From assembly GCF_000150275.1 (NCBI RefSeq), contig NW_002060950.1, positions 3,264,198 through 3,328,197 on the forward strand: a stretch of DNA of 64,000 nucleotides. The letters are read 5' to 3'. Both the position numbers and the translations under genes were made by a program. Each line of letters opens with the position of its first letter. Positions within the stretch are counted from its first letter, which is position 1. Origin of the DNA: Trichoplax adhaerens. Taxonomy: Eukaryota > Animalia > Placozoa. This document shows positions 1,585 to 63,001 of the stretch, one piece after another. The notes under the pieces were generated by a model, which had not been told where the DNA came from, made no database searches, and was given only the letters and a program-made list of their open reading frames with translations.

Positions 1585-2564
1585 ATGGAAAAATGATTAT
1601 TTATTGTTATTTTGAATATTGATAGTAGCCTAATCAAGTGAATTAATCGCCTTTATGGCGAAATTGACCTACTCAAGGTTATCACCAGTCATACATAAAT
1701 GGGGCTGGCAAACTGTGCTTTTTTAACCGTTATATCTGAGAAAATAAATGGCCGTTGCTTGATATTGCTTGTGTGATCCATTTATTTCTGCTAGCAAGCT
1801 GTGATCTATTGCTTGCTACGCCAATGACATCTGCCTTAAGTACTTCAATCATGGCAAAGAGAAGTCCCATACCATCTCTTATTCATATAATAATTTGTAA
1901 AATCTTGATCGCTTTCCCAGTTTATTGGTCGTATACAGTTTCGGTATAAATCCTCGTTATCATTAGTATTAAGCGCTATATCATTATCTTCCGGCCCACT
2001 GAGAAATTAGCACCAAAAATACTAAAATGTTGTACGCTTTGGTATGAATTATCTTGTTACTTTTTTAACACCCTTCCCCATTCATAATCATATCGGTTCA
2101 AAGTCAATGTGCTCAATTTTCATCTCGATCAATTTGGGCTATTATTGTTAATATGATATTGGTTGTGTTTCAATTTTTTTATTCGGATGATCGTTACATT
2201 GACTGCTTATGTTTTGATCCTATCCCAACTTGAGAGGAAAGTGATTTCAATTGAACAGGAATCTACTAATAGTAAAAATCTTAAGCGTAAGTTTACTTAC
2301 GTTCTTCTAATTATAACTGTAACATTTTTTTATGCTCTTTACCTTGGACCTTACCGTTACTTTGAAGGCATTTACGGTCAATTTGTGACACTGGTTTTAC
2401 TAGATGATAGCAATCCAAGGAATCCAAGGATGCGGGCAATTATCATATTAGGTAGGATATCAATGCCTGTCACTGCGACCATCTATAATCCAATAATTTA
2501 TTGTATTTTTATGGTAAAATTTGAGAATTACTTTTTTTCTATGCTATTATCGATGGAAAAATAA
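1585..2564 (+). pseudogene. Degraded class A GPCR pseudogene (array copy 1)
   Basis: Fragments in several frames match the intact neighbours: TM2 LASCDLLL, TM3 ICKILIAFPVYWSYTVSV then TAA at 1947-1949 where most paralogues have Gln, ERY decayed to KRY, ICL3 ESTNSKNLKRK, TM6 PY, TM7 GRISMPVTATIYNPIIYCIF. Frameshifts lie between the fragments. The 5' boundary is approximate. Confidence 0.88.
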
Positions 2565-4878
2565 CGTAATTGCCTCAAGCGTTGGGCTCCCTGCTCAAGA
2601 AAGGACTGAGAATCGTCTTTAATTAAAAAACACATAGTTTCCAATTCGAAAGGATCAATTAAGGGTGCTCACCATTAAGAAACAGCTCCATTTAGATTTA
2701 GCTTTATAGTAACTATTATATTATCATAGATCATTCAATGCTACAAAATTTTCTGCCAAAATTGCTCTCATTCTTAGTTTGATCTAATTTTAAAACTGAG
2801 TATAACTCCATGCTTTCTATTGGGTAAAAAGCAAAAAGAATTTTGACGTTCTTGAAACTTCGGAAAATTACTATAGTACAGTTGGCATTTTTGTAATGAT
2901 TAAAATATCTACTATCGACTCGATCGGAGAAAGCTTATTAGCTTCATACATAATGAAACTGTACTTTAATTATCGAAAATATACAATAGATATTTAACGT
3001 CATATGCATTAAAAGTTAGCAAATTATGCTAGAGAATGCCAGATTGCACTGCATGCAATAGTTGACGTTACATAGTATTATCAAAAAATCCCCGTTTGGA
3101 CTGATATAGATTTTAGCACACTGACCGGCATATAATAAAATATAATTAAAAACATTATGCAAAAGGCACATACATAATTATATTTATTGTACCAATATAA
3201 ATTCACTAGTATCGGTATATTATAAATATTAATATTATTGTTCGAATTAATTAAAAGGCTTTCGATTCCTATACGTGATTTATGTCTAAAATTAAACAAA
3301 GTCGCAAATAAAAATTGTTACCAATCTAACCATTGTTCAATTTCAATTATCAAAATAGTCTTATATTGAAAGCTATTCCATAATAATTCTTATGAACTTA
3401 TTTAACGATACGGATTCAAAATATGTCACCATACTCTCCAGTAATATCCACCTTTACTTAGTTTTAACTTTTTGGTTAGCTAATCAATTATACTGCGTTC
3501 TTAATTAACTAATATACAATTAGTCATCATAGAACAATGAAATAGCTTCAAATTTCTATGGCCAAAACTGAGATAACGTGTTCTTAATGGAAATAAAAAA
3601 TAATAAGCTTGATTTTACGTGTAAGTACCTCAAGACAGTTTATTTCTTCAGTACCTTCATTAGAAGACGATAAATGAGGAGAAATAATATTTTACTATGA
3701 GTACACACAACAAAAAGATATTGTTGATATGCAAATTAATTATGTTAACATTCTATCTTATAGTACTTAAGAGAGCTTGTTTGATAAATTGATCTTGCTT
3801 GCATTCTGTCTATGAAATCACGGAGCATAATTTTTATCATTATAAAACTTTCCTAAGTTGACCATGATTATAGAGACTAAAAGCATCACAAAAACTTCAT
3901 CACATCGTTAATAAAATACAACAGTAAAGAACTAACTTAACCAAACCAAATTACTTTTAGAAATGTTCATGCTATAATTTTGCTTACCTAATTAGTTTTT
4001 GATATGCCGATCTTTAAAATCGAACAAATGACCAATAATTAAACATAATCAAAACAAGATGATATTTATGCGTAATAATTCAATATTTAGATATTATCGT
4101 TGTTATTGGTTATAATCTTGTTTTTCAATAAACACGATCTTCTATTATTAATTAACTAATAGATAGAATATGAAAAATTACACCTAATAATTAAAAACAT
4201 TGACAGCAGTGCTTTATTAATAATTTTGATAAATAAGATATCAGTTTTGAATAATATCAAGTATCTCAGGCTGATTGCTTTTGTCAAACTATTTTAATCA
4301 ATTCCTGTTTTACTCTTTTACTCGAATCATCGATATAAGCACTAACTCTGGACGGAGAAAAAATAATTATTGTGTATAATTAGTTAAAATTTACTATTGC
4401 AAAAGTTGCCGATTGAAAGTGGCTTTGCATTCTAGCTTTGTTAAGCAAATTTATGTTAACGATATTGCCTTATATTCTATGGTAATTATTGATAAAACTT
4501 GATCAATCTATCGATAAATAGTACAGTCCGAATGATAACAGTTAAAAACCCCAGGGTGATCATATAAACAAATAACATTGCACCTACCGGCATTTATGAT
4601 AGAATACAAATTGACATTGGCACTATTGTTAAATGATACCATCTATTTTTTGTTCTAATAATTGTACTAATTGTAAGCTCAATATTAGTAAGGTATATAT
4701 AGACACACAATACTGTAATTGTTCGTGAATTATTTTTTATACCGCAGCCTAGAAGTTGTAAATCAAAACTGTTTCCACTTGTTGAATTACCTTTACCTAA
4801 ATTCAACTGAGAATTAATCGCCCAATTCATAGCGGTTTAATCAAACTCTTATCAGTCACTAAATCAAATTGATGATAT

Positions 4879-5964
4879 ATGAATATCACATCGGATAACA
4901 GGATTGATCGTAATCTTACCTTTGCTCCACAAGCGATCGAGATGCAACTTGGAATGGGTATCTTAACTCTGGCTTGTATTAGCATCATCCCTAATTTAAT
5001 TATTATTATCGGTACTCATTATAAGACGATACTAAGAAGGTCAATGTACTATTTTATGGCCAACTTAGCTTTTTGTGATGTAATATTGTCTATCTCTCTA
5101 CAATTAAGTATTTTATTAGCCATAGCAGCACAAAAAAAAACAATTACTGAATCAGATCATAGTATGCTCTGTAAATTTTTGGTAATCTTTCTAGGGTACT
5201 GGTCATATGGAGCTTCAGTACATACCCTCATTGTTATTAGCTATGAGCGCTATAATGCAATCTTACGACCAACTGCAAAATTATCACGCAAAAAGGCCAA
5301 AAGTCTATGCGGCATAGCATGGCTTACTTCGCTTCCAATTTCAATTCCATTTCTAGTTACTGGTACCGCTAAGGGTTATCAATGCACTTCATATACTCAT
5401 CATACAAGTTGGGTACTTGTCAGTAACTTGACTTTGGTAGTATTCCAATTCATCATACCCATTACTGTCATGATAACTACCTATTCTTTAATTTTACGTC
5501 AACTAAGGTTTAAAGTATCGTCAGGACGAACTGAATGTAACAAGAATAAGCAGCTTAAACGGAGAACAGTTTATATGGTTATGCTTACAACGGCTATCTT
5601 TTTCGTTTGTGCCTTACCTTGGACGCTATCTCAGCTCATTGAAGCGTTTACAGGAAAATTTTCATTTCAATTTTTTATTGATACTAGATTTTCTGCTTTT
5701 CAAACAATTATTAGATTAAGCAGAATATTATTGCCCGTGACCGCGCTATATAATCCAATTATTTACTGTATCTTTAATGAACAGATACGAAAATTATTCT
5801 TTCCTTGCTGCTACTGGCAACGTATTACAGCCATTCAGATATTTTCTTCGCCCACTTCTCACAATAGATTCAACAAGGTTGATAATAGCCTATCAGCCCT
5901 TTCAGCTATTAAATCTGAATTTAACCATACGAAGTCTACATTAACTGCAATTTCTATAAGCTAA
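4879..5964 (+). CDS. Intronless class A (rhodopsin-like) 7TM GPCR, orphan, 361 aa
   Basis: Seven hydrophobic segments; IPN (TM1), NLAFCD (TM2), LCK and ISYERY (TM3), W (TM4), ECL2 Cys, FQFIIP..Y (TM5), FFVCALPW (TM6), YNPIIYCIFN (TM7/helix 8); N-terminal glycosylation sequons NIT and NLT. Confidence 0.96.
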   Translation: MNITSDNRIDRNLTFAPQAIEMQLGMGILTLACISIIPNLIIIIGTHYKTILRRSMYYFMANLAFCDVILSISLQLSILLAIAAQKKTITESDHSMLCKFLVIFLGYWSYGASVHTLIVISYERYNAILRPTAKLSRKKAKSLCGIAWLTSLPISIPFLVTGTAKGYQCTSYTHHTSWVLVSNLTLVVFQFIIPITVMITTYSLILRQLRFKVSSGRTECNKNKQLKRRTVYMVMLTTAIFFVCALPWTLSQLIEAFTGKFSFQFFIDTRFSAFQTIIRLSRILLPVTALYNPIIYCIFNEQIRKLFFPCCYWQRITAIQIFSSPTSHNRFNKVDNSLSALSAIKSEFNHTKSTLTAISIS

Positions 5965-10897: not shown

Positions 10898-11116
10898 NNN
10901 NNNNNNNNNNNNNNNNNNNNNNNNNNNNNNNNNNNNNNNNNNNNNNNNNNNNNNNNNNNNNNNNNNNNNNNNNNNNNNNNNNNNNNNNNNNNNNNNNNNN
11001 NNNNNNNNNNNNNNNNNNNNNNNNNNNNNNNNNNNNNNNNNNNNNNNNNNNNNNNNNNNNNNNNNNNNNNNNNNNNNNNNNNNNNNNNNNNNNNNNNNNN
11101 NNNNNNNNNNNNNNNN
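10898..11116. other. Assembly gap (N run) immediately upstream of a GPCR start codon
   Basis: Run of N. Confidence 0.99.
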
Positions 11117-11121
11117 TAAAT

Positions 11122-12153
11122 ATGTCTAACGTTTCAACATGTAATGAAAGTAATATTGGTAATTTCTGCAATCGTTCAAGGTATTTCAGTGAGCACATGC
11201 TTATATTATCAGCAACAACTCTCGTTCTTGGTGGTATTATTGGGATTTTTCCGAATGTAATTATAGTTGTAACCGTTTATCGCAATAAATCATTCCGAAA
11301 GCCAACTTACTTCTTCATAACTAATTTAGCAGTCTGCGATTTGATGCAAAGCGCGGCAACGGTATTCAATTTATTTTTAACGGCCATAGACAGACAATTT
11401 CAATTGCCATTAAGTGTTTTAACTGTTTTATGTAAAATATTTGCCATCTTTCTAAAATATTGGTCCTATACCGCCTCTATGCAGACATTAATCATCATCA
11501 GCGGTGAAAGATACCACGCCATTTTTCGACCCACTAGAAAGCTTTCAACAAAGAGAGCTAGATCGTTATGTTTTCTTTCATGGGTAATATCGTTCGCAAT
11601 AGCATTTCCATATCTAATAACGGCTTCAGCCCTCAATAATAAACCAAAAATTTGCGTTGCGTATCAAAATTATACAGAATGGACGACTGTAATCAATATT
11701 ATTCTATTTATTTTCCAATTTATGCTTCCTGCAATTATTATGATCATTTTATACTCTCTTATACTACGTCATCTAAAAAGAAAGAGTAGAATATTACAAA
11801 AGGAATCGAATGCAAACAAAAAGGTAAAGCAACGAACTGTTTATATGTTAATGACCACTACATTTTTTTATTTTATATTTGCTACTCCTTGGGCTATATC
11901 TCTAGTTACTATCTTCACAACGCGTAGATTACCTTTCAATTTAGGAAGAGATAGAAGCAATCCACTACTGCAAACTATTATGGGAATAAGTAGAATGTCA
12001 TTGCCGTATACTACATTATATAATTCAATAATTTACTGCATTTTCAATCACAAAATGAGACGGATATTTTTTCCATGCTTTCATCGCTCAACAAGATTTA
12101 AAGTGAAGCATGTTCATTCCGTTGGACCTAATGTAACATTAACGCCAAGCTAA
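11122..12153 (+). CDS. Intronless class A GPCR, orphan, 343 aa (NSxxY variant)
   Basis: GIFPN, NLAVCD, LCK..WSYTASMQTLIIISGERY, FQFMLP, FIFATPW, YNSIIYCIFN. The ATG is 5 bp after a gap, but N-terminal length and Cys pair match the paralogues. Confidence 0.95.
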   Translation: MSNVSTCNESNIGNFCNRSRYFSEHMLILSATTLVLGGIIGIFPNVIIVVTVYRNKSFRKPTYFFITNLAVCDLMQSAATVFNLFLTAIDRQFQLPLSVLTVLCKIFAIFLKYWSYTASMQTLIIISGERYHAIFRPTRKLSTKRARSLCFLSWVISFAIAFPYLITASALNNKPKICVAYQNYTEWTTVINIILFIFQFMLPAIIMIILYSLILRHLKRKSRILQKESNANKKVKQRTVYMLMTTTFFYFIFATPWAISLVTIFTTRRLPFNLGRDRSNPLLQTIMGISRMSLPYTTLYNSIIYCIFNHKMRRIFFPCFHRSTRFKVKHVHSVGPNVTLTPS

Positions 12154-17280: not shown

Positions 17281-17491
17281 CTGTTTTATCTTAGCCGTTT
17301 TCGATTAATTATATGAGAGGTGCAAATTGAATTCACTCTCACGGACAGGCGGAATAATAAACGTAGGTTTTAAGCTACTCTCTCGGTTGTGACGGTTTAT
17401 AGCATTTCATAAGGATTTGCTTAACTTCAATATCTCAGATTAAGAGTTAGAGGTCACGAACCTATAGTAATAGTAAAAGACTATCACTCGG

Positions 17492-22495: not shown

Positions 22496-23593
22496 ATGAA
22501 TATCACATTATGTACTAGCAGCCTCTGTAGAAACGCTTCTAGCAATCTTGCTTCACCATTAGGATTCTCAACTGCGACTACTTTAATGATCGGTGGTTCA
22601 ATTGGAATTATTCCCAACATTATTATCATAGCTGGTATCTACCTAAAATCATCATTGCATAAACCCACTTATTATTTAATTGCTAACTTAGCTGCAAGCG
22701 ATATTATGCTCGGAATAGGAACAATATTAAATGTCATATTAGCATTAATCGATTATCAAATTGGAATATCTAGAAAGATTCATTTATTATTATGTAAAAT
22801 AATCGTTATCCTACCAAATACTTGGTCTTATACTGCTTCTATACAAACCTTAGTTATAATTAGCGCCGAACGATATCAAGCTATATTTCGTCCGACCAAA
22901 GTATTAACAACCAGAAGAGTAAAATGGTTATGCCTCATAGCATGGGGAATATCATTAATAGTTTCAATTCCTCCTGCTATCGATGCATCAATCAGAAGAC
23001 CAAAATTGCGATTTTGTATTAATAATGGAAAATACACTTATTGGACAACGGTGATTAACCTTGTCTTATTTATTTTCCAGTTTGCCCTTCCAGCTGTCGT
23101 TATGACTGTACTATATTCATTAATACTTCGCCAATTGAGTAGAGGAAGCATCGTTGGACAAATTGAATCAAGAAAAAGTAAAAAGCTTAAACGTAGAACT
23201 ATCTATATGCTATTAATAACAACATTTACGTTTCTAGCATTAGCAACACCTTGGGCACTAACTTTAGCAATTGTAGCAATTACAGGCAAAATAACCTCAC
23301 AAATCATTTCAAGCACAAATAATCCAACAATTCGATCGATAATTCGCCTCAGTATATTAATGCTTCCCTTCACAACATTGTATAATCCTGTGATATATTG
23401 TATATTTAATAACCAAATTCGGCAGTTATTCATTCCAACTTGTAAATTATTTGCCAGAAGTAAATACTTTGCTGTTCTTCCAGTAGCACAGCAAGACTCT
23501 AACAATATGAATAATAAAGATTCAACACCAGTAGTGCTAACAGCTCATTCCCAATCATTATCCAAGCAAGATACTTTAGCAACAATTCCGTGA
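22496..23593 (+). CDS. Intronless class A GPCR, orphan, 365 aa
   Basis: GIIPN, KPTYYLIANLAASD, LCK..WSYTASIQTLVIISAERY, FQFALP, FLALATPW, YNPVIYCIFN. Confidence 0.96.
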   Translation: MNITLCTSSLCRNASSNLASPLGFSTATTLMIGGSIGIIPNIIIIAGIYLKSSLHKPTYYLIANLAASDIMLGIGTILNVILALIDYQIGISRKIHLLLCKIIVILPNTWSYTASIQTLVIISAERYQAIFRPTKVLTTRRVKWLCLIAWGISLIVSIPPAIDASIRRPKLRFCINNGKYTYWTTVINLVLFIFQFALPAVVMTVLYSLILRQLSRGSIVGQIESRKSKKLKRRTIYMLLITTFTFLALATPWALTLAIVAITGKITSQIISSTNNPTIRSIIRLSILMLPFTTLYNPVIYCIFNNQIRQLFIPTCKLFARSKYFAVLPVAQQDSNNMNNKDSTPVVLTAHSQSLSKQDTLATIP

Positions 23594-28619: not shown

Positions 28620-29367
28620 GCTAGTACGTTAGCGAAGTCATCGGAATTTTAACAAGCATTATCATGATATGGGATATCTACCGTAAGAAATCCTTGCATA
28701 AATCGATCTAATACCTTATTGATAATTTCGCTCTCTGCAATATTCTTCTGAGCATAACAATTATAAACAATCCAGCTTTGACAATTGCTGTCCAAAGCAA
28801 TTAACCTTCCAATATTCACAAAATATTGTGCAAAATTTTCACTATATTTCTAAGAACTTGGGCTTGCTCAGCTTCTATTCAAGCCTCATTATTGTCAGTC
28901 TCAAGCGACATCACACCATCTTCAGACCTGCTAAACTGTTAAGCAACAGAAAAGGCAAAGCAACTACGTATTTTTCTTTGGTCAATCTTACTTATCATAT
29001 CGTTTCCGTTTATTATAACTTCGACGAATCTGAATAAACCTCCACATTTATGCATTGGATTTCAACTTATGATGCATGGACAATCATCACTAGTAATTTA
29101 CTCTTCATTTTTCAATTTGCTATTCCAAGCGAGAAAATGATTATGCTATATTCCTTGATACTATTCAAATTAAGTAGGAAAGCTATGGTTGGACAAATTC
29201 AATCTAAAAGAATTTTCAGCTCAAGCGTCAAGCGATCTATATGCTATCGTTGACAACGTCTCCTTCATTAGCTTTTTTGCACCATGGGTGATATCGAATG
29301 CTTTCGCCTTAATATCAGGAAAAGTGCTGATTAAATCATGACGAAATTCAGGAAGTTCATTTATCCA
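28620..29367 (+). pseudogene. Degraded, 3'-truncated class A GPCR pseudogene
   Basis: Reads VIGILTSIIMIWDIYRKKSLHKSI*YLIDNFALCNILL (TM1-TM2), SLKRHHTIFRPAKLL (ERY region), LFIFQFAIPSEKMIMLYSLIL (TM5) and APW (TM6), with stops and frameshifts. TM7 is missing, replaced by LTR sequence. Confidence 0.88.
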
Positions 29368-38140: not shown

Positions 38141-39250
38141 ATGAATTTTACCGGTGCTCTCTGTATCAACAATACCTGTCGAAATGCAAGCAACCCAACA
38201 TCATTTACTTGGCAAAGTGATACGTTAGCCATGCTCTTAATCGGAGGATTAATTGGTGTTATACCCAATGTTATCATCTTAATAGGCATCTCCCGTAAAA
38301 AGGAATTACAAAAACCAACCTATTACCTTATAGCTAATTTAGCTATTTGTGATCTAATGCTCAGCTTTACAACTATTTTCAATATTATACTTCCTATAAT
38401 ATCTATTCGAGCTTCGCTTTCAGTTGGATTTCATACTTTTATATGCAAGGTAATAGCTATATTTCCAGCTTATTGGTCTTATATGGCTTCTGTTCAAACC
38501 TTAATTTTTATCAGTGCAGAGCGTTACCACGCTATCTTTCGACCTGCAATCAAGTTAACAGCCAAAAAGGCTAAATTCTTATGTCTATTAGCTTGGATTA
38601 TATCGCTGATTATTTCATTCCCCATAATTATAATTTCGGCCCCGGCTCGTAGGTCTGGAAAAGGTGTACTGTTTTGTCGTGAGTATGTTTCATACACAAT
38701 TTGGATCTCAGTCATCTATATGATTTTATTTGTTTTCCAATATGCCCTTCCGGCAGCTGTCATGATTATATTATATTCGCTTATATTACGTCATTTAAGG
38801 AAGAAAAACATAGCTGGTCGAAATGAATCATACAGAAGTAAAATGTTAAAGCGTAAGAGTATCTACATGCTAATGACGACAACAGTTATATTTTTTATCT
38901 TTTCATCACCATGGGCACTCGCACTGGCTATCATAGCAATCTCAGGAAATAATATAATATCAGATGTACAAAGTAATCCTACCTTAGGTTTCATTTTAGG
39001 AATCAGCAGGCTCTCTTTACCATTTACGACGGTCTATAATCCAATTGTGTATTGCATTTTCAATGGTCACATAAGACGATTATTTTTTTCATGTCCTTTT
39101 ATATTAATTAAAGAAAGACAATATGTGCATCCAGAACCAAAGATATTATTGAGTCATGAAAGTAATACCTTTAAATCAATAAATAATACGGACATGCAAG
39201 GTGACCATAAGCTAACAAGTGGAGAATCAATGTTAACTTCAATAGCTTAG
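38141..39250 (+). CDS. Intronless class A GPCR, orphan, 369 aa
   Basis: GVIPN, KPTYYLIANLAICD, ICK..WSYMASVQTLIFISAERY, FQYALP, FFIFSSPW, YNPIVYCIFN. Confidence 0.96.
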   Translation: MNFTGALCINNTCRNASNPTSFTWQSDTLAMLLIGGLIGVIPNVIILIGISRKKELQKPTYYLIANLAICDLMLSFTTIFNIILPIISIRASLSVGFHTFICKVIAIFPAYWSYMASVQTLIFISAERYHAIFRPAIKLTAKKAKFLCLLAWIISLIISFPIIIISAPARRSGKGVLFCREYVSYTIWISVIYMILFVFQYALPAAVMIILYSLILRHLRKKNIAGRNESYRSKMLKRKSIYMLMTTTVIFFIFSSPWALALAIIAISGNNIISDVQSNPTLGFILGISRLSLPFTTVYNPIVYCIFNGHIRRLFFSCPFILIKERQYVHPEPKILLSHESNTFKSINNTDMQGDHKLTSGESMLTSIA

Positions 39251-46438: not shown

Positions 46439-47535
46439 ATGAATACAAACTATTCTATACCGTGCTTTGCCAACAACTGCCGAAATTTTGGCAATGCTAC
46501 AGCTATTATCAGACCACAAACATTTTCTTCTTTAAACCTTTTAGTAATCGTAACCGGAATCGTAGGAATTATTCTTAATACAATACTTCTTATAGGTTTC
46601 TATACTAAAAGATCTTTCCATAAACCGACATATTGCCTACTTGCCAATCTAGCAATTTGCGACGTGTTATTAGGCCTAGCAAGTCTATCTAATTTTGCTA
46701 TCATTTCGCTAGCATCAAGAGCAAGAATACCAGCAAATATCTTTCTAGTGATTTGTAAGCTTTTTTCAGTATTCCCAGTCCACTTATCTTATACTGCTTC
46801 AATACAAACATTAACTATGATCAGCAGTGAGCGATATCTTGCAATTTTTCGACCTAATTCTGAATTAACTCGTAGAAAAGCTATAATATTATGCCTCATA
46901 GCGTGGATCATTTCCCTATGTATTAGCTTCCCATTTATTATTACAACGTCTATTACTACTGGAAGACTATTCACGCGATGTATTGCCTTTAAAAGCTATA
47001 CAAGTTGGACAAGCATCATTTATGTTATACTATTTGTCGGTCACTTTGTTCTACCAGCTGTCATAATCACCACATTATAGTCGTTGATATTGCGTCGATT
47101 AAGCGAAGCTGTCCAAGGACATTCAGAGTCGAGCAGTAGTAAAAAGTTGAAGCGCAAAACTATCTACATGTTACTAACCACAACGACTTTATTTTTTTTA
47201 TTTCTACACCATGGGCATTATCGTTGGCTATTATAACAATAACTGGAACATTAGGATCTGATATATCAAAAGATCCCAAGCAGCCTTTTGCTGCGAAAAT
47301 TGTATAATCCCGTAGATACATTTTGCTATTTACTACAGTTTACAATCCAATAGTTTATTGCATTTTCAATAAGCATATACGACAGCTGTACATTTCTTGC
47401 TGTTTTAAATTTTTAAAAAAGCTTCCATTTCACCCAGTTCTCAATCAAGAAGTGACAACTGCCATATCAATGTTCCAGATTTATCTGCAACACCGGATCA
47501 AAATCGTATCAAGGATGATATTTCGAATTCGGTAA
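46439..47535 (+). pseudogene. Recently inactivated class A GPCR pseudogene, closest paralogue of 51333-52550
   Basis: ATG at 46439; intact through TM5, then TAG at 47078-47080 (Tyr5.58 position), a 1-nt deletion in the poly-T run near 47192-47202 (TM6) and TAA at 47305-47307. The TM7 motif YNPIVYCIFNKHIRQLY is still recognisable. Confidence 0.93.
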
Positions 47536-51332: not shown

Positions 51333-52550
51333 ATGAATGCAAGTAAATTAGCATCGTGCATTGGCAACAATTGCCGAAATTTCAGCAATGCTACAGATAA
51401 TATCAGACAGAGACCAGCCAACCCGATACAACTCTTATTAACCATAGCTGGATGCATGGGAATTATTCCTAATATAATACTTGTTATAGGTTTCTATACT
51501 AAGAAATCTTTCAAAAAGCCAACATATTGCCTGCTTGCCAACCTAGCAGTTTCTGATATGATATTGAGCCTAGGAAGTCTATCTAATGTTATCGTCAACT
51601 CGCTTGAAGCAAGGTTTAGAATACCATTAAATATCTATCTTGCACTCTGCAAAATTTTTGCAATATTTCCACTGTATTTATCTTACAGTGCGTCTATACA
51701 AACATTAATTATGATCAGTAATGAGCGATATCTTGCAATTTTTCGGCCTACTTCTGAATTAACCCGTAAAAAAGCTAATTTCCTATGCCTCATAGCATGG
51801 ATTATTTCTTTATCTATTTCTTTCCCATTTATTATCACAACATCTGTCACGAACGTAATACCAAAACAATGTGTTGCCTTTGAAAAATTTACTAATTGGA
51901 CCGCCATCATTTTTGTTGTAATATTTATCTTCCAGTTTGCTCTACCGACCGTAGTCATTATTACATTATATTCATTAATATTGCATCGATTAAGGAAAAC
52001 AGTCCAGGGACAAACTGACTCTAGCAAAAGCAAAAAGTTAAAACGGAGAACTATCTATATGTTGTTAACAACAACGATTATATTTTTAGCCTTTTCTACA
52101 CCATGGGCTATATCACTGGCTATCATGGCAATAACAAGATCATTACCAGCTAAGATAGTGGTGGATCCTAACTATCCAATAGCTGGAGGAATTGTACGAA
52201 TCAGTCGATTTGTGGTACCATTTACTGCGATTTATAATCCAATCATTTATTGCATTTTCAATAAGCATATCCGACAATTGTACTTTTCTTGCTGTTTCAA
52301 TTTCATCAAAAATTCAGCTGTTGTACCTAGCGTCTATACAAACAGTGATAATGGTCAGATCGACACTGTCAATTCCACTGCAGCTGCCAATTCAAATACG
52401 ATCATAGTTTCTAATACAGCCGCAGGCATAGTTGCAAATTCAACTACAACAGAATTTGCTGATTTAAATACAACTGCAACAGCTGATTTAAATTCAACTG
52501 TAGTACAAAAGTATATATCGAAAGATAATGAGGCAATGTCAACCGATTAA
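51333..52550 (+). CDS. Intronless class A GPCR, orphan, 405 aa, extended Thr/Ser/Ala/Asn-rich C-tail
   Basis: GIIPN, NLAVSD, LCK..SYSASIQTLIMISNERY, FQFALP, FLAFSTPW, YNPIIYCIFN, CC after helix 8. Confidence 0.96.
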   Translation: MNASKLASCIGNNCRNFSNATDNIRQRPANPIQLLLTIAGCMGIIPNIILVIGFYTKKSFKKPTYCLLANLAVSDMILSLGSLSNVIVNSLEARFRIPLNIYLALCKIFAIFPLYLSYSASIQTLIMISNERYLAIFRPTSELTRKKANFLCLIAWIISLSISFPFIITTSVTNVIPKQCVAFEKFTNWTAIIFVVIFIFQFALPTVVIITLYSLILHRLRKTVQGQTDSSKSKKLKRRTIYMLLTTTIIFLAFSTPWAISLAIMAITRSLPAKIVVDPNYPIAGGIVRISRFVVPFTAIYNPIIYCIFNKHIRQLYFSCCFNFIKNSAVVPSVYTNSDNGQIDTVNSTAAANSNTIIVSNTAAGIVANSTTTEFADLNTTATADLNSTVVQKYISKDNEAMSTD

Positions 52551-53108
52551 GAAGTATAAAATTCTAAACTTCATTAAAGCCGCTTAGAGTAATGATTCTT
52601 TATCTTATTCTTTATAGAATTGATAGTTTAACTCCATTTGATTAATGTCTTGAAGCTATTTACAGCATTCGTATTATTTCAACTAGTAATAAGATGTGGC
52701 AGGCTAAAATTACGGTTTAGTCACGATAATAATAGTTTAATAGCCTTATGTTCATTAGACTATCGTATTTTAACTGATTTGACTTTGTAGTTGAGAATAA
52801 TTGAACTTCTAAACATAATATTTGACTGCTTTTCATATTCATTAGATGATTATGGATTATTAAAATAGCCATAACCTAAAATGAAAATTTATTGCCTTAA
52901 AATTACTTTAAGCAATAACCTTTTTCAATTTTAAGCGTAGGAACGTGTCACTTCACTAATCTTTATTAGTAATTTAAAAAATTAATGTACCGTAAAAATA
53001 TTTCAATTTTTAATTGATCATTGATACATTAAATAAGAGCAGGAACAAATACTATTGAGTTTTTAATAAGCATTGTTGGTGGCATAAATCACGTTGCTAA
53101 TTATACTT

Positions 53109-53660
53109 TGTAATGTAACTTAGTATTGTGATTGTAGACTGTTAGCCATATGGAGTATAATGTACGGTAGATATTTATCGTAAGAGATATTTGGTAGCTA
53201 TAACTATAGACTGTAGTGGTAGAGACTCTATGCTAGAATACAGATGACTATATACAGTAAGCTGTTGAGTTACTAATAAGGCTATAGGTAAAAATAGAAC
53301 TGTAAATCGTATATTAGGATATGGTTAATTCATTGTACTTTGGCTGGTGTGAATAATGTCTACGTAAGTACTGTAGTCGTATCCATATTGGATTAATGAT
53401 GGTCCGCAGCAGAATAGTCTTACCAAGAATAATTTAACTATGTGTAAAATAAGGTAAAAGGTTGCCATGCGGATTGTAGCTGCGAATGCTACGAAAAGTA
53501 TAAAAGCATGCAACTTTAGATTATTCTGTTAGTTCGTTCTAGAAGTCTTTAGCAGTAGTATTCGGCTAAAGCAAAGCTGTGTGTAGTTAATCTTTGTATA
53601 AGATTCAATAAAGCCCTTATTTTTCTAAAATTTGGAATTTCGTGATTGGTATATATCACA
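53109..53660 (+). mobile_element. Solo LTR family A (552 bp) with 5-bp TSD
   Basis: TGTAAT...ATCACA; perfect TSD TACTT (53104-53108, 53661-53665); about 15 substitutions and one 2-bp indel relative to 34674-35223. Confidence 0.93.
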
Positions 53661-56623: not shown

Positions 56624-56673
56624 NNNNNNNNNNNNNNNNNNNNNNNNNNNNNNNNNNNNNNNNNNNNNNNNNN
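56624..56673. other. Assembly gap
   Basis: 50 N. Confidence 0.99.
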
Positions 56674-59234: not shown

Positions 59235-60302
59235 ATGAATAGTACCGTGTGTGCACCTAATAATTGCGATAACTTAATCAACTCCACAGATATTTTCCTA
59301 GCATCTGGAGTCGAATTTAGTGTATTAATAGGAAGCGCAGTCATAGCCATATTAGGAATTGTTCCTAATATTATCATTATTCATGGAATCTGCCGCAAGA
59401 AATCATTACAAAGGCCGACATTTTTCTTCATCGCCAACTTATCTGTTTGTGATATTTCGTCAAGTGTCTCCATGTTAGCAAATATAACTTTGATAATTTT
59501 AACGGTAAAAAGCAGCTTACAATTACTAACTCATATTATATTATGTAAAATTGCTATGTGCTTGTTTTACTGGTCTTATACCGCCTCAATACAAACTTTG
59601 ATTATCATTAGTTGCGAAAGATATCATGCTATATTCCAGCCTTTTAAGCCCTTGAGAGCAAAAAGAGCTAAATTATTGTGTCTATTAGCCTGGACTGTAT
59701 CATTTACTATTTCATCTCCATTCCTTATAACAGCCACTACTGATAATTCTAAACCTAAGAAATGTGTTCCATATACATCTGAAACTGCTTGGACAACTAT
59801 AATCAATACGATATTATTTGTTTTCCAATATGCTTTACCAGCGATTATAATGATCGTCCTATATTCGCTAATATTACACCAATTAAAGAAGAGAAATCAT
59901 GCAGTAAGAATAGAATCAAAAAAAAGCAAACAACTTAAGCGTAGGACTATCTGCATGCTGTTAACGACTACAATAATTTTCCTAATATTTACCGCGCCAT
60001 GGGCTCTATCTCTGGCTGTGCAAGCAATTACTAAAAATTATGCAGCTGGAGCAGTAAATCATTCAAGTCCTTTTCAACGCTATATTACTCAAGCAAGTAG
60101 GGTCCTCTACGCATTAACAACTCTATATAATCCGCTAATATACTGCATTTTCAACGAGCAAATAAGAGATTTATTTTTCTATCGTTGCCACGTATTGGCC
60201 AAATACAGTAATCAGAGTAACAACCGCATGGAATTATTATCACAAAACAAAAGCAAAACAACTAGGAGCTCTATCCAACAATATCCAGTTATTGCCCTAT
60301 GA
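59235..60302 (+). CDS. Intronless class A GPCR, orphan, 355 aa
   Basis: GIVPN, NLSVCD, LCK..WSYTASIQTLIIISCERY, FQYALP, FLIFTAPW, YNPLIYCIFN. Confidence 0.96.
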   Translation: MNSTVCAPNNCDNLINSTDIFLASGVEFSVLIGSAVIAILGIVPNIIIIHGICRKKSLQRPTFFFIANLSVCDISSSVSMLANITLIILTVKSSLQLLTHIILCKIAMCLFYWSYTASIQTLIIISCERYHAIFQPFKPLRAKRAKLLCLLAWTVSFTISSPFLITATTDNSKPKKCVPYTSETAWTTIINTILFVFQYALPAIIMIVLYSLILHQLKKRNHAVRIESKKSKQLKRRTICMLLTTTIIFLIFTAPWALSLAVQAITKNYAAGAVNHSSPFQRYITQASRVLYALTTLYNPLIYCIFNEQIRDLFFYRCHVLAKYSNQSNNRMELLSQNKSKTTRSSIQQYPVIAL

Positions 60303-60424
60303 CATAGAAATTGATTAATTGTCAAGCTAAATTTATTGTTGTATTGCATATGTTTCATTATCACTAATAGAAATATTAGTATTGCTTTCGCTTAAATTAT
60401 TAATCGAAATTGTTTATGAATCAT

Positions 60425-60826
60425 TGTTACAGTGTTACCTTATCGTAAGGATGGTTTTATAAGTACAGTAGTAGCTAGTATGGAGAATATCCATATTTGC
60501 AGTGCTAGGTAAGATAAGTAATGCCTTAAAGTGGATGTGGTTTGTAATAGTTCATTACATATTTGATATTGATTGTTATTGTGTGATAGATAGCAGTAAG
60601 ATTATTCAAGTTCTAGTTGATGATAGTTGAATTAGACAATCTACGAGCTTAGATTAAGATTAACTATGAGTAAGAGATTCAAAATATTTACTGATAGAAA
60701 AGCTATGTAAGGAACATCTTAGTTCGAGATGTTTCTCCTAGTAAGTTATAATAATAATGCTGTTGTTGTTTATAAATTAGACGGTTCCTATATAAACGGG
60801 AACATTTGAGTTGAGTGGTGTAGTAA
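60425..60826 (+). mobile_element. Family F LTR, runs into an assembly gap
   Basis: Starts TGTTACAGTGTTACC; identical to 63124-63525. Confidence 0.85.
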
Positions 60827-60876
60827 NNNNNNNNNNNNNNNNNNNNNNNNNNNNNNNNNNNNNNNNNNNNNNNNNN
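60827..60876. other. Assembly gap
   Basis: 50 N. Confidence 0.99.
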
Positions 60877-60902
60877 AATCGAAATTGATTGTTATGAATC
60901 AC

Positions 60903-61958
60903 TGTTACAGTGTTACCTTATTGCATGAATAGTTTAATAGAACCGTAGTAGCTAACATGGAAAATATCTATATTTATAGTACCAGAAAAGATGAGTAATA
61001 CCTTAACATGGATATTAATAGTAATATTTCATTACATATTTGATACTGATTGTCATTATGTATAGATAGTAGAGAGATGATTCTAGATTTAGCTAAAGAT
61101 AATTGAGATAGACAGTATACATGCTTAGATTAAGATAAAGTAAGAGTCGTAGATTACAAATATAGACCGATAGAAAAGCTATGTAAGGAACGTCTCTGTT
61201 CGAAATATCTTTACCAGTAAGGTATAGTAATAATACCGTTGATGTTGAAATGTTAGATAGTTCCTATATAAACTGGAAGATTTTAAGTTGAGTTGCGAAA
61301 ACTTATAGATCTGCATATACTAATTAAATTCCTATCTTTGTGGTACTTTGCTGTATGTTGTTACGGTATTACCTTACCATTAGGATATTTTAATAAGTGC
61401 AGTAGTAGCTAAAATGGGCAATATGCATATTTGCCGTGCTCGGTAAGATAAGTAAGGCCTTAACTAGGATATTATTTTTGATAGTTTATTAAATAGTTGA
61501 TATTGATTTTTATTAAGTGCAGATAGTACTATAGTAAGATAATTCAAGTTCTAGCTATTGATAGTTGAACTAGACAGCATACATGTTTAGATTAAGATTA
61601 AGTATTAGTAAGAGAATAAAAATATTTACTGATAGAAAAGCTATATAAGGAACATCGCAGTTCGAGATGTATCTCCTAGTAAGGTAAAGTAATGATACTG
61701 TTGTTATATACAAATTAAACGATTTCTATATAAACGGGAACGTTCGAATTGAGTTGTGTGGCGAGACGTCGTATACGTATCTATGCTAATAAAAGTTCTA
61801 TCTTTACCGTACTTCGCTGTAAGCATTTAACGTTTAGTAAAAGGGCCTTTCAGTCAGTAGTTACTTATAGACTTTTACAGGGAGTTTCCTTGTCGCAGAG
61901 TTGAAATTGTTACATATGTGTTAACGTTTAATAAAAGAGCGTTTAAGTTAGTAGTAAC
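60903..61958 (+). mobile_element. Family F host LTR split by a second family F LTR
   Basis: 60903-61358 and 61915-61958 join into one family F LTR, which is cut again at 61959 by an unrelated TG-starting segment. Confidence 0.82.
61359..61914 (+). mobile_element. Solo LTR family F (556 bp) nested in its own family, 5-bp TSD
   Basis: TGTTAC...GTTACA; perfect TSD TATGT (61354-61358, 61915-61919); CTATATAAA box. Confidence 0.9.
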
Positions 61959-62161
61959 TGTTAGCGGTAACGATAGCGTCTGTTTTTTGGTATGCTCCCA
62001 GTCAACTGAAGCGAGATCGTCAGCTAAGCTTCCACGTGAATATCTACCTTTATTCTGATTTCTCACCACCTTATAAACTGTACAATACAGTACCTTTACT
62101 GATCTAGTACGGAACAGAACTAGTGCCGTTAAGCTCTGATAAGGTTGCAATACAACCGATA

Positions 62162-62397
62162 TGTAGTAAAAGGACTAAAAGTAGAGTCCCTTGTAGTTTT
62201 TAGTATGTAATTAGTATTATTTTACTATAGAAAATACCTAGAAAGTGATAGTGTCTTTAAGTTTTACCCTGTCAAATCATCATGTCGCCATCTTTTCTTC
62301 TTCATTATTTTACAAGGTATTATATAGATTACTATAGAAGTAGCCCTATAGAGCAAATGCCTAATCTAAAGAAAGGGCGTTGATGTCTATCAAATGA
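62162..62397 (+). mobile_element. 5' end of a family C LTR, cut by a gap
   Basis: Highly similar to 42095-42330 (TGTAGTAAA(A)GGACTAAAAGTAGAGT...). Confidence 0.88.
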
Positions 62398-62447
62398 NNN
62401 NNNNNNNNNNNNNNNNNNNNNNNNNNNNNNNNNNNNNNNNNNNNNNN
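62398..62447. other. Assembly gap
   Basis: 50 N. Confidence 0.99.
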
Positions 62448-63001
62448 CTAAACCTAAGAAATGTATTCCATATGCATCTAAAACTGCTTGGACAACTACA
62501 ATCAATACGATATTATTTGTTTTCCAATATGCTTTACCAGCGATTATAATGATCGTCCTATATTCGCTAATATTACACCAATTGAAGAAGAGAAATGATG
62601 CTGTAAGAATAGAATCAAAAAAAAGCAAACAACTTAAGCGTAGGACTATCTACATGCTATTAACGACTACAATAATTTTCCTAATATTTACCGCGCCATG
62701 GGCTCTATCTCTGGCTGTGCAAGCAATTACTAAAAATTATGCAGCTGGAGCAGTAAATCATTCAAGTCCTTTTCAACGCTATATTACTCAAGCAAGTAGG
62801 GTCCTCTACGCATTAACAACTCTATATAATCCGCTAATATACTGCATTTTCAACGAGCAAATAAGAGATTTATTTTTCTATCGTTGCCACGTATTGGCCA
62901 AATACAGTAATCAGAGTAACAACCGCATGGAATTATTATCACAAAACAAAAGCAAAACAACTAGGAGCTCTATCCAACAATATCCAGTTATTGCCCTATG
63001 A
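62448..63001 (+). CDS. 3' half (ECL2 to C-terminus) of a near-duplicate or allele of the 59235 GPCR; 5' part hidden in the gap
   Basis: Matches 59749-60302 at offset 2699, with 9 substitutions in the first ~210 bp and none seen afterwards; reading frame open from the gap. Confidence 0.85.

What the first reader, a model, noticed from the sequence alone, without database searches (positions are those of the whole stretch)
1585..63001. Tandem birth-and-death array of single-exon orphan GPCRs, a candidate chemoreceptor cluster
Seen: nine loci plus one partial duplicate, all intronless, all on the + strand, one family, with no other recognisable protein gene in 64 kb. Six are intact and three are pseudogenes at different stages of decay. 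TM cores and intracellular loops (KPTY, IFRP, SKKLKRRTIYM) are conserved, while the N-terminus, ECL2 and ECL3 vary strongly. Established: single-exon clustered genes with variable extracellular faces and frequent pseudogenisation are typical of chemosensory receptor repertoires such as vertebrate olfactory receptors. Inference: this is an independently evolved sensory receptor repertoire sharing one G-protein interface, probably in an early-branching, possibly neuron-less animal.
Basis: partly seen in the sequence, partly recalled or inferred. Interest (0 to 1): 0.8.

Follow-up and report, generated by a model that had tools for sequence, protein, structure and literature searches.

The report
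Placozoan class A GPCR tandem array
This window from the neuron-less animal Trichoplax holds a head-to-tail row of single-exon rhodopsin-type receptor genes found only in placozoans; the row is real, but such expansions are already published, and these genes look more like peptide receptors kept for a long time than like fast-evolving smell receptors.

Summary
The window (Trichoplax adhaerens scaffold C1407, 3264198-3328197) carries six intact intronless 7tm_1 genes, three pseudogenes and one gap-cut copy, all on the + strand, and nothing else recognisable.

There are three corrections:
- The array is larger: at least 16 loci over about 104 kb, plus members on unplaced contigs.
- The "partial duplicate" is cut by an assembly gap, and its probable 5' half lies on unplaced contig C1146.
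- The N-terminus carries a conserved C-x4-C/glycosylation motif.

The family is restricted to placozoans. A profile search of 1.8 billion proteins shows a clean score break. The nearest outsiders, by sequence and by fold, are neuropeptide receptors (opioid, orexin, tachykinin, QRFP, ghrelin).

The chemoreceptor inference is not supported:
- The variable outer face and conserved inner face are no stronger than in 93 unrelated class A receptors.
- Most paralogues have orthologues in other placozoan sequences, with the outer pocket retained.
- H1-H2 dN/dS is 0.15-0.24 for two genes.

Placozoan-specific GPCR expansions, expressed combinatorially in peptidergic cells, are already published (Najle 2023; Eitel 2018). 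The scan also noted a class C GPCR array elsewhere in this genome (unchecked). The ligands remain unknown.

The parts
1791..2613 (+). Pseudogene psi1. It covers TM2 to the C-terminus only and is closest to the -3187/C979/3115981 clade (about 45% aa).
   Evidence: tblastn shows 3 in-frame stops, a frameshift near 2521 and indels in TM4-ECL2. ERY has become KRY and the Pro6.50-Trp6.51 motif is lost. No TM1 is detectable upstream.
4879..5964 (+). Intact gene A (361 aa). It belongs to the basal subclade that lacks the N-terminal Cys pair.
   Evidence: 7tm_1 E 1.4e-36. It has an orthologue clade with unnamed placozoan proteins P0025/P0170 at 100/100 support.
10898..11116 (.). Assembly gap just upstream of gene B.
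   Evidence: Unplaced contig C286 (L020) is 99.7% identical to 11117-12040 and reads 279 nt into the gap. It shows a stop 15 codons upstream of the ATG and no other ATG. It does not reach the left edge of the gap, so the gap is longer than 279 nt or the sequence differs there.
11122..12153 (+). Intact gene B (343 aa).
   Evidence: 7tm_1 E 5.3e-37. N-terminus confirmed by C286.
22496..23593 (+). Intact gene C (365 aa). Its H2 orthologue is RDD36422.
   Evidence: 7tm_1 E 1.3e-36. 99.7% aa identity to H2, dN/dS 0.15. AlphaFold2 model pTM 0.73 with 7 TM helices, an ECL2 hairpin and helix 8. Orthologue clade with P0002/P0003.
28637..29326 (+). Pseudogene psi2 (TM1 to ICL3 only).
   Evidence: At least 4 stops and a frameshift. 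Homology ends just before the inverted repeat 29386-29753 / 29947-30320. The same sequence is present in H2 at 98.7% with no gene called.
38141..39250 (+). Intact gene D (369 aa). Its H2 orthologue is RDD36421.
   Evidence: 7tm_1 E 1.7e-37. Orthologue clade with P0004 at 100/99 support.
46439..47418 (+). Pseudogene psi3, the sister of gene F (61% aa, 74.5% DNA).
   Evidence: TAG at 47078-47080, where H2 has Tyr. Both H1 and H2 (RDD36337, 273 aa) leave the family frame near codon 254, inside TM6. H1 has a further stop downstream.
51333..52550 (+). Intact gene F (405 aa). It corresponds to TRIADDRAFT_58780 (modelled as 380 aa) and to H2 RDD36336.
   Evidence: 7tm_1 E 2.5e-36. dN/dS H1-H2 is 0.24 from 18 substitutions. 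Orthologue clade with P0008/9/11/13.
59235..60302 (+). Intact gene G (355 aa). Its H2 orthologue is RDD36335 (95.8% aa).
   Evidence: 7tm_1 E 3.1e-40. H2 agrees with G at 39 of 45 sites that separate G from G2. 11 of the 15 aa differences from H2 lie in residues 276-353.
59961..60826 (+). An 866-nt tract identical to 62660-63525, ending exactly at gap 60827. It is either a gene-conversion tract or a chimeric contig end.
   Evidence: The two window copies are 100% identical here. H2 is 98% identical to both up to about 60150 and then falls to 94-61%. No H2-like version exists elsewhere in G000.
62450..63001 (+). G2, the 3' part of a second G-type copy (codons 173-355, open frame). It is cut by gap 62398-62447.
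   Evidence: 99.2% identical to 59749-60826, with all 9 differences in the first 212 nt. The probable 5' half is on unplaced C1146:3-2623: 95.9% to 57063-59685, open for codons 1-150, ending 63 nt short of this piece. C1146's other end equals the scaffold at +66388..+67593 at 100%.

Best explanation
This is part of a placozoan-restricted subfamily of rhodopsin-class GPCR genes in Trichoplax adhaerens.

Arrangement (shown): the genes are laid out head to tail, with at least 16 loci over about 104 kb at the end of scaffold C1407. Further members sit on unplaced contigs, and an older 4-gene cluster lies on C1412.

History (shown): the array grew by local tandem duplication, because neighbours are each other's closest relatives. 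Most duplications predate the split between Trichoplax and the other placozoan lineages in public data. Since then turnover has been slow: a few recent gains (G/G2, -3187/C979) and about one third of loci decaying, one of them ending at a repeat insertion.

The proteins (shown from sequence and model): each intact gene encodes a complete 7TM receptor with:
- a short glycosylated N-terminus, with a C-x4-C loop in the main clade;
- the TM3-ECL2 disulfide cysteines and a predicted ECL2 beta-hairpin;
- ERY and NPxxY motifs;
- a family-specific TM6 that lacks Trp6.48 and has an invariant Pro6.50-Trp6.51.

Mechanism (inferred): a ligand binds in the outer half of the bundle. The residues there differ between paralogues but are kept between orthologues, so each paralogue probably has its own stable ligand. 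The signal passes to heterotrimeric G proteins through the conserved inner half.

Ligand class (inferred, about 50%): secreted placozoan peptides or other paracrine signals. That would make these genes part of the receptor side of the published peptidergic cell network, not a fast-evolving detector array for environmental odorants.
For: - Identity and placement: G000 coordinates and genome size. Proteins from Trichoplax sp. H2 and T. adhaerens at 94-99.7% identity.
- Class A membership: 7tm_1 scores of 126-139 bits. Anchor residues are invariant or nearly so in 40 family sequences. AF2 model with 7 TM helices plus helix 8, pTM 0.73.
- Array extent and orientation. Neighbours as closest relatives.
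- Placozoan restriction: in a profile search of 1.84 billion representatives, family members score 184-522 bits. Every named one is Trichoplax, and the rest are unnamed Logan/ENA contigs. Below that there is a break to 164 bits and less, where the named hits are starfish, teleost, nemertean QRFP-like, amphioxus GHSR-like and other Trichoplax GPCRs.
- Old duplications: 100%-supported orthologue clades for A, C, D, F, 91738 and two C1412 genes.
- Constraint: dN/dS 0.15 (C) and 0.24 (F) between H1 and H2. Orthologue identity is 0.62 in the outer TM halves and 0.70 in the inner halves, against 0.34 and 0.53 between paralogues.
- Peptide-receptor likeness: PDB sequence hits are opioid, nociceptin, NPFF, SSTR2 and NK3. 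All top 49 Foldseek hits are opioid, orexin, NK1/3, ghrelin, SSTR2 or QRFP receptors, with target-normalised TM-score mostly 0.73-0.83. ECL2 forms a beta-hairpin.
- Literature: placozoan peptidergic cell types express a median of 25 GPCRs in unique combinations, and these are 'largely a placozoan-specific expansion' (PMC10580291).
Against: - No ligand, expression or coupling data for these particular genes could be found. Look-ups of TRIADDRAFT_58780/58781 and the RDD accessions in three papers' supplements and in the full-text library were blank.
- Resemblance to peptide receptors is at the generic class A level (about 20-24% identity) and does not fix the ligand class.
- The species of the unnamed orthologue sequences is unknown (a metagenome scaffold and an SRA run). 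The depth of the 'old' duplications is therefore relative, not dated.
- Gene G shows dN/dS of about 0.7-1.2 against H2, partly because of its odd 3' end.
- A pseudogene share of one third is high, and it is typical of chemoreceptor arrays.
Confidence: 0.6

Rival explanations
1. One reading: this is an independently evolved chemosensory (environment-sensing) receptor repertoire. Its ligand-facing surfaces diversify, and it turns over by birth and death like vertebrate odorant receptors.
For: - Tandem, single-exon, same-strand array with about one third pseudogenes.
- Lineage-restricted family.
- The outer half is more variable than the inner half.
- Recent duplicates G/G2 and -3187/C979, and raised dN/dS for G.
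- Published remarks link placozoan GPCR duplications to 'sensory capacities' (PMC6067683). It also remains open whether peptidergic cells are sensory (PMC10580291).
Against: - The outer/inner asymmetry is weaker than in a control of 93 unrelated class A receptors (0.59 vs 0.48).
- Most paralogues have conserved orthologues, with the pocket region retained.
- Purifying selection acts on C and F.
- There is no affinity to odorant-receptor families: 7tm_4 is below threshold, and the nematode Sr models score about 90-110 bits below 7tm_1.
- The closest folds are all neuropeptide receptors.
Confidence: 0.3
2. A sub-claim about the 'partial duplicate'. It is not a separate locus. It is the second, divergent haplotype of gene G, which the assembler placed in tandem, with its 5' half left on unplaced contig C1146.
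For: - The match between 59749-60826 and 62448-63525 runs from gap edge to gap edge.
- C1146 is collinear with 2.2 kb of sequence upstream of G at 96%, and rejoins the scaffold at 100% beyond the next gap.
- The sequence after both copies is collinear: 61604-61925 matches 63677-64000 at 97.5%.
- Both Trichoplax assemblies are unphased consensus sequences of highly heterozygous genomes in which one allele is often shared between H1 and H2 (PMC6057997). H2 tracks G at 39 of 45 sites.
- Other unplaced contigs here are clearly redundant: C286 matches B at 99.7%, and C929 is an alternative version of C979.
Against: - The order G, then 60877-62397, then G2's 3' half, then a gap, then +66388 fits one linear path, with C1146 filling the gaps as a true tandem copy.
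- Silent divergence of 4-7% is high compared with the 0.3% between C286 and gene B.
- An 866-nt stretch of zero divergence next to 4% divergence needs a further event under either model.
Confidence: 0.45
3. The array is a decaying relic: the open genes are not expressed or are losing function.
For: - One third of loci are already broken.
- No expression data were retrievable.
- Upstream regions share no detectable similarity.
Against: - Nine 343-405-aa ORFs stay open in DNA of about 30% GC, where the longest non-GPCR open frame in the window is 108 aa.
- Activation motifs are invariant.
- dN/dS is 0.15-0.24.
- Intact orthologues exist in other placozoan sequences.
Confidence: 0.05

Closest known systems
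Placozoa-specific class A GPCR expansions (Najle et al. 2023, PMC10580291; Eitel et al. 2018, PMC6067683; 420 GPCRs in T. adhaerens and 923 in Trichoplax sp. H2 as cited in PMC4302439 and PMC10580291)
   Same: Same organism and same kind of gene: 7tm_1 receptors without orthologues in other phyla, duplicated within placozoans. Several of these very genes are already in the public annotations (TRIADDRAFT_58780/58781; RDD36422, 36421, 36336, 36335, 36337, 36155).
   Different: No paper I could search describes this particular subfamily, its array layout or pseudogenes, the Pro6.50-Trp6.51 TM6 signature or the N-terminal C-x4-C loop. Its expression and ligands were not retrievable.
Bilaterian neuropeptide receptors of the beta/gamma rhodopsin groups (opioid/nociceptin/somatostatin, orexin/QRFP, tachykinin, ghrelin)
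   Same: These are the best sequence matches in the PDB (E about 1e-16), and they make up all 49 top Foldseek matches. Shared features are the TM3-ECL2 disulfide cysteines, the ECL2 beta-hairpin, E/DRY and NPxxY. The named non-placozoan profile hits include nemertean QRFP-like and amphioxus/nemertean GHSR-like receptors.
   Different: There is no orthology: outsiders score 164 bits or less, against 184-522 bits inside the family. Trp6.48 of the CWxP motif is absent in all 40 family sequences. The automatic H2 names (CXCR1, tachykinin-like 86C, mu-opioid, parapinopsin, OXGR1, 'Rhodopsin, GQ-coupled') are best-hit labels, not assignments.
Vertebrate odorant receptor clusters (Pfam 7tm_4)
   Same: Single coding exon, same-strand tandem arrays, many pseudogenes, and a lineage-specific family within class A.
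   Different: 7tm_4 scores of 17-24 bits are below the 27-bit threshold, while 7tm_1 scores 126-139 bits. The family has roughly 25 loci rather than hundreds. Orthologues are retained across placozoan lineages. Extracellular variability is not above the class A norm.
Independent peptide-GPCR expansions in Cnidaria (Thiel et al. 2024, PMC11087051)
   Same: A non-bilaterian lineage with its own large class A expansions that cluster near bilaterian neuropeptide receptors without 1:1 orthology. Many of the cnidarian ones proved to be neuropeptide receptors when tested.
   Different: A different phylum and no shared orthogroups. That study filtered out the placozoan-only clusters, so this family was not analysed.

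Membership tests
Rhodopsin-class (class A) GPCR, Pfam PF00001 7tm_1 | Score above the curated Pfam threshold over the full model | tested here: met
   126-139 bits against a 30.5-bit cut-off, model positions 2-260 of 260, for all six intact ORFs.
Rhodopsin-class (class A) GPCR, Pfam PF00001 7tm_1 | Seven transmembrane helices plus helix 8 | tested here: met
   AlphaFold2 model of gene C, pTM 0.73: helices 21-50, 57-89, 93-131, 139-162, 182-216, 226-263, 277-304 and 306-312. Target-normalised TM-score is mostly 0.73-0.83 to solved class A receptors.
Rhodopsin-class (class A) GPCR, Pfam PF00001 7tm_1 | Anchor residues N1.50, D2.50, E/DRY, W4.50, P5.50, NPxxY, and the C3.25-C45.50 disulfide pair | tested here: met
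   Counts out of 40 family sequences: N1.50 38, D2.50 35, E3.49 38, R3.50 39, W4.50 40, P5.50 40, N7.49 36, P7.50 38, Y7.53 40, C3.25 40, C45.50 40.
Rhodopsin-class (class A) GPCR, Pfam PF00001 7tm_1 | CWxP motif with the Trp6.48 toggle in TM6 | tested here: not met
   Position 6.48 is Ser/Ala/Thr/Met in all 40. Pro6.50 is present in 39 of 40 and is followed by an invariant Trp6.51. This is a family-specific variant. Other accepted class A families also lack Trp6.48 (my own knowledge), so it does not exclude membership.
Rhodopsin-class (class A) GPCR, Pfam PF00001 7tm_1 | Coupling to heterotrimeric G proteins on ligand binding | not testable with these tools
   Needs a cell-based assay.
Vertebrate-type odorant receptors (Pfam PF13853 7tm_4) | Score above the curated threshold | tested here: not met
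   Best scores are 23.6, 20.4 and 17.1 bits against a 27-bit cut-off.
Nematode serpentine chemoreceptor families (Srw, Srsx, Srx, Srv) | Best-scoring family for the protein, not a cross-hit within the rhodopsin clan | tested here: not met
   Some hits pass their own cut-offs (Srv 34.7, Srsx 31.4, Srx 27.8, Srw 24.6-25.1 bits), but 7tm_1 scores 126-139 bits for the same full-length proteins.
Bilaterian neuropeptide receptor orthogroups (opioid/SSTR, orexin/QRFP, tachykinin, ghrelin) | Orthology: family members nest with receptors of other phyla | tested here: not met
   The profile search shows a break between family scores (184 bits or more; Trichoplax or unnamed placozoan-like only) and all others (164 bits or less). 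The tree is rooted with other Trichoplax GPCRs and the family is one clade at 99/98 support. No cross-phylum tree was built.
Chemosensory receptor repertoire (functional category) | Tandem arrays with frequent pseudogenes | tested here: met
   16 same-strand loci on the scaffold, 6 of them broken or fragmentary.
Chemosensory receptor repertoire (functional category) | Ligand-facing variability in excess of ordinary class A receptors | tested here: not met
   EX/IN identity ratio is 0.59 in the family (0.65 for TM halves) and 0.48 in 93 unrelated class A receptors (0.52 for TM halves).
Chemosensory receptor repertoire (functional category) | Rapid, species-specific gain and loss | tested here: inconclusive
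   Most paralogues have orthologue clades in other placozoan sequences, and H1-H2 orthology is 1:1. There are also recent H1 duplicates and H1-specific lesions. The species of the unnamed sequences are unknown.
Chemosensory receptor repertoire (functional category) | Expression in sensory cells; response to environmental chemicals | not testable with these tools
   Supplement look-ups by gene ID were blank.

The most novel reading that the evidence does not exclude
The intact members are environment-facing chemoreceptors, each expressed in a different peptide-secreting cell type. A neuron-less animal would then have its own olfactory-like, receptor-defined sensory-secretory cell classes, evolved independently of bilaterian and nematode chemoreceptors.
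Probability: 0.25. Interest if true: 0.7.

Novelty: new member of a known kind. Interest (0 to 1): 0.3.

Why it matters
Placozoans coordinate behaviour without neurons, through peptide-secreting cells that each express their own set of GPCRs. Which receptors hear which signals is the main open question in that system (PMC10580291).

This report adds the following:
- It delimits one compact, placozoan-only receptor subfamily of about 25 loci.
- It gives clean gene coordinates and family-specific sequence signatures.
- It sets out the orthologue structure.
- It corrects misleading automatic names and one faulty gene model.

That makes the subfamily a tidy candidate set for deorphanisation. As a discovery it is modest, because the phenomenon is published and the chemosensory reading has no specific support.

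Tried and rejected
In the meantime I set the topology from Ballesteros-Weinstein anchor residues; it later agreed with the model to within 0-5 residues.
- I searched G000 for an H2-like version of gene G's 3' end, to test for a chimeric contig. Only the two window copies came up, at 90%, so this is unresolved.
- I tested whether H2 is a mosaic of G and G2. It is not (39:6), but this does not separate allele from paralogue.
- Gene-ID look-ups in supplements of Najle 2023, Yanez-Guerra 2025 and Eitel 2018, and in the full-text library, found nothing. The stored files are truncated, so this says nothing about expression.
- All-against-all comparison of 600-nt upstream regions of the intact genes found no similarity.
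- dN/dS between paralogues was not attempted. At about 45% aa identity, synonymous sites are saturated.
- Site-model tests (codeml) are not available here.
- One script failed on an empty list and one timed out in MAFFT. Both were rerun.
- I considered a bacterial or contaminant origin for the window and rejected it: 105.6-Mb genome and Trichoplax proteins at up to 99.7% identity.

Full report
WHAT THE WINDOW IS

The window is G000:C1407:3264198-3328197, in a 105.6-Mb, 1,414-contig genome. The encoded proteins match Trichoplax sp. H2 and T. adhaerens proteins at 94-99.7% identity, so this is the placozoan Trichoplax adhaerens (H1). G+C is about 30% overall and 34% in the coding parts.

CHECKING THE OBSERVATION

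Six ORFs of 343-405 aa lie on the + strand: 4879-5964 (A), 11122-12153 (B), 22496-23593 (C), 38141-39250 (D), 51333-52550 (F) and 59235-60302 (G). Each hits Pfam 7tm_1 at 126-139 bits over the whole model. Each is one uninterrupted frame from ATG to stop. The H2 gene models for C, F and G cover exactly these frames, so the coding regions are intronless.

tblastn with the six proteins finds three broken copies and one partial copy:
- psi1, 1791-2613: three stops, a frameshift, TM1 unrecognisable.
- psi2, 28637-29326: at least four stops and a frameshift. Homology ends just before an inverted repeat at 29386-30320.
- psi3, 46439-47418: TAG at 47078, leaves the family frame near codon 254, one more stop.

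H2's annotated product for psi3 (RDD36337, 273 aa) has Tyr where H1 has TAG. It also leaves the family frame near codon 254. So that gene was already disabled or is decaying in both lineages, and H1 carries an extra lesion.

Nothing else recognisable is in the 64 kb:
- The ten longest non-GPCR open frames (84-108 aa) have no Pfam match.
- There are no tRNAs and no Rfam hits.
- The H2 annotation calls only GPCR genes on about 32 kb of collinear sequence.
Short exons of an intron-rich gene would escape this test.

THE ASSEMBLY GAPS

Gap 10898-11116 ends 5 nt before gene B's ATG. Unplaced contig C286 is 99.7% identical to 11117-12040 and reads 279 nt further. It shows an in-frame stop 15 codons upstream and no other ATG, so B is complete.

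Gaps 56624-56673 and 60827-60876 are intergenic.

Gap 62398-62447 matters most. The 'partial duplicate' (62448-63525) is 99.2% identical to 59749-60826, and the match runs exactly from one gap edge to the other. All nine differences lie in the first 212 nt, and the remaining 866 nt are identical.

H2 agrees with G at all nine sites. Its identity to both window copies then falls, from 98% around 60050-60150 to 94-61% further on, over the stretch where the two window copies are identical to each other. No H2-like version of that stretch exists elsewhere in the assembly. The 3' end of G is therefore either a gene-conversion tract or a chimeric contig end.

The missing 5' half of the second copy (G2) is very probably on unplaced contig C1146:
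- C1146:3-2623 is 95.9% identical to 57063-59685, which is 2.2 kb of upstream flank plus codons 1-150. The frame is open.
- It stops 63 nt short of where 62448 begins.
- After a 3-kb gap, C1146 ends in 1,206 nt that are 100% identical to the scaffold just beyond the 2,387-N gap following the window.
- Silent divergence from G is similar in both pieces (dS 0.042 and 0.068; dN/dS about 0.55).

So G2 looks like a full-length copy broken by the assembly, not a truncated duplicate. Whether it is a tandem paralogue or the second haplotype of G cannot be decided here. H2 tracks G at 39 of 45 diagnostic sites. That fits both readings, because both Trichoplax assemblies are unphased consensus sequences of highly heterozygous genomes that often share one allele (PMC6057997).

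THE ARRAY IS LARGER THAN THE WINDOW

On the same scaffold and strand there are also, in window coordinates:
- intact genes at -3187, +91738 (TRIADDRAFT_58781) and +100034;
- pseudogenes at +74262 (one TGA) and +82023;
- a fragment at +67081.

That makes at least 16 loci in about 104 kb, ending about 10 kb from the scaffold end.

Unplaced contig C979 carries another intact paralogue (82% aa to the -3187 gene). It overlaps the scaffold edge of the gap at -8405..-6631 at 99.5%. C929 is an alternative version of C979. C809 and C270 hold further partial or broken copies.

A related gene lies at C1407:3115981, and an older four-gene cluster lies at C1412:4372978-4398939 on the - strand.

Neighbours are each other's closest relatives: psi3 with F; G with G2 and psi4; psi1 and the -3187 gene both fall in the C979/3115981 clade. 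That is the signature of local tandem duplication.

WHAT THE PROTEINS ARE

Across 40 family sequences the class A anchors are invariant or nearly so: N1.50, D2.50, ERY, W4.50, P5.50, NPxxY and the C3.25/C45.50 disulfide pair.

Two features are family-specific:
- TM6 lacks the Trp6.48 toggle in all 40 sequences. Instead it has Pro6.50 (39 of 40) followed by an invariant Trp6.51.
- The main array clade has a short N-terminus reading MN-x-T ... C-x4-C ... N-x-S/T, with two to four glycosylation sequons. The spacing between the two Cys is longer in B and in the 100034 gene.
So the N-terminus is not simply variable.

An AlphaFold2 model of gene C (pTM 0.73, core pLDDT above 85) gives seven helices, an ECL2 beta-hairpin and helix 8. 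The helix ends agree with my anchor-based boundaries to within 0-5 residues.

RELATIVES

A profile of 21 family members was searched against 1.84 billion representative proteins. It gives 184-522 bits for family members. Every named one is Trichoplax, and the rest come from Logan or ENA contigs, for example a metagenome scaffold and SRR30664517. Below that there is a break to 164 bits and less. The named hits there are starfish and teleost models, nemertean QRFP-like, amphioxus and nemertean GHSR-like receptors, and other Trichoplax GPCRs.

The best PDB sequence hits are opioid, nociceptin, NPFF, SSTR2 and NK3 receptors at E about 1e-16. All 49 top Foldseek hits are opioid, orexin, NK1/NK3, ghrelin, SSTR2 or QRFP receptors.

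So the family is restricted to placozoans, has no one-to-one orthologues elsewhere, and most resembles neuropeptide receptors. Pfam 7tm_4 stays below threshold, and the nematode Sr models are weak cross-hits.

TESTING THE CHEMORECEPTOR ARGUMENT

Among 14 H1 paralogues, mean pairwise identity is 0.22 in extracellular loops, 0.34 in outer TM halves, 0.53 in inner TM halves and 0.41 in intracellular loops plus helix 8. Overall EX versus IN is 0.29 versus 0.50, p = 9e-12.

The same measure on 93 unrelated class A receptors gives an EX/IN ratio of 0.48 (0.52 for TM halves), against 0.59 (0.65) in this family. The asymmetry is thus a general property of class A receptors and says nothing about chemosensation.

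In a maximum-likelihood tree (46 rows, LG+G4, rooted on four other Trichoplax GPCRs):
- A, C, D, F and the 91738 gene each form 100%-supported clades with unnamed placozoan sequences at 53-63% identity.
- Every H2 protein pairs 1:1 with an H1 gene.

Between such orthologues the outer TM halves are kept almost as well as the inner ones (0.62 vs 0.70). Between paralogues they differ much more (0.34 vs 0.53). This pattern suggests that each paralogue keeps its own binding pocket.

dN/dS between H1 and H2 is 0.15 for C (3 substitutions) and 0.24 for F (18 substitutions). It is 0.7-1.2 for G, which includes the anomalous 3' end.

Birth and death does occur. There are recent duplicates, about one third of loci are pseudogenes, and H1 carries its own extra lesion in psi3. 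But it is slow, and most duplications predate the split between the placozoan lineages sampled.

LITERATURE

- T. adhaerens was reported to have about 420 GPCRs (cited in PMC4302439), and Trichoplax sp. H2 has 923 (PMC10580291).
- Eitel et al. 2018 reported independent GPCR duplications in Hoilungia and Trichoplax and linked them to sensory capacities.
- Najle et al. 2023 showed that peptidergic cell types express a median of 25 GPCRs in unique combinations, that these are largely a placozoan-specific expansion, and that deorphanisation is still needed.
- Thiel et al. 2024 removed placozoan-only clusters from their cross-phylum map.
- Yanez-Guerra et al. 2025 deorphanised five monoamine receptors from other clades.
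- No paper in the library names these genes.

The kind of thing is therefore known, and these genes are annotated, but this subfamily and array are not described.

VERDICT

My best reading is a slowly turning-over tandem family of peptide-receptor-like class A GPCRs. They most likely receive endogenous secreted signals (about 50%). Environmental chemoreception is a live alternative (about 25-30%).

Earlier scan notes on this window (LTR nesting at 60877-63989; an LTR hairpin at the end of psi2) gave useful leads and are consistent with what I saw. The scan also noted a class C GPCR array elsewhere in this genome, which I did not check.

Noticed in passing
window 24576-25196 / 42601-43229; 34672-35235 / 53107-53672; 27115-27987 vs 43429-44282 (inverted): Dispersed repeat families (93%, 96% and 80% identity) sit between the receptor genes. 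A piece of one LTR-like family has dozens of copies at about 80% identity across the genome. They coincide with assembly breaks and may drive unequal crossing-over in the array.
   Followed up: partly
window ~57071 (H2 locus L002:7165-7799): H2 carries a 635-nt insertion of the 24576-25196 repeat family at this point, and H1 lacks it. Unplaced contig C1146 (the G2 flank) begins at almost the same position, 57063.
   Followed up: no
window 51333-52550: The public T. adhaerens model TRIADDRAFT_58780 is 380 aa and aligns to the 405-aa ORF at 93.8% over 405 columns. The 25-residue deficit suggests a wrongly predicted internal intron. The H2 model RDD36336 has the full 405 aa.
   Followed up: partly
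H2 orthologues of window genes (P0001, P0005, P0016, P0019, P0023) and relatives (P0017, P0024, P0028, P0030): The automatic names in the H2 annotation differ for each member of one family: CXCR1, tachykinin-like receptor 86C, mu-type opioid receptor, 2-oxoglutarate receptor 1, 'Rhodopsin, GQ-coupled', parapinopsin, neuropeptide S receptor, blue-sensitive opsin, neuromedin-K receptor. They are best-hit labels only, and the opsin names in particular could mislead.
   Followed up: yes
window 59961-60826 and 62660-63525: 866 nt are identical between G and G2. H2 is 98% identical to both at the start of the tract and falls to 94-61% from about 60150. This is either recent gene conversion within H1 or a contig end built from the other copy's reads.
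   Followed up: partly
G000 contigs C286, C979, C929, C809, C270, C1146: Six small unplaced contigs all belong to this array region. Some are near-identical redundant copies (C286 at 99.7% to gene B). Others carry real extra paralogues (C979 at 84% DNA identity to its neighbour). The locus is under-assembled, so gene counts are lower bounds.
   Followed up: yes
G000:C1412:4372978-4398939 (- strand): A second cluster of four intact family members branches at the base of the family tree. Two of them have orthologues in unnamed placozoan sequences. It may be the older seat of the family.
   Followed up: partly
window 29386-29753 vs 29947-30320: An inverted repeat (80% identity) starts about 60 nt after the point where homology of pseudogene psi2 stops. 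This is consistent with truncation by an element insertion, as an earlier scan note proposed.
   Followed up: partly
just outside the window: -19999..-10047 and 64001..66387 (window coordinates): Long runs of N (9,953 and 2,387) flank the window. The first may be an assembly gap or withheld sequence. Both could hide further family members.
   Followed up: no
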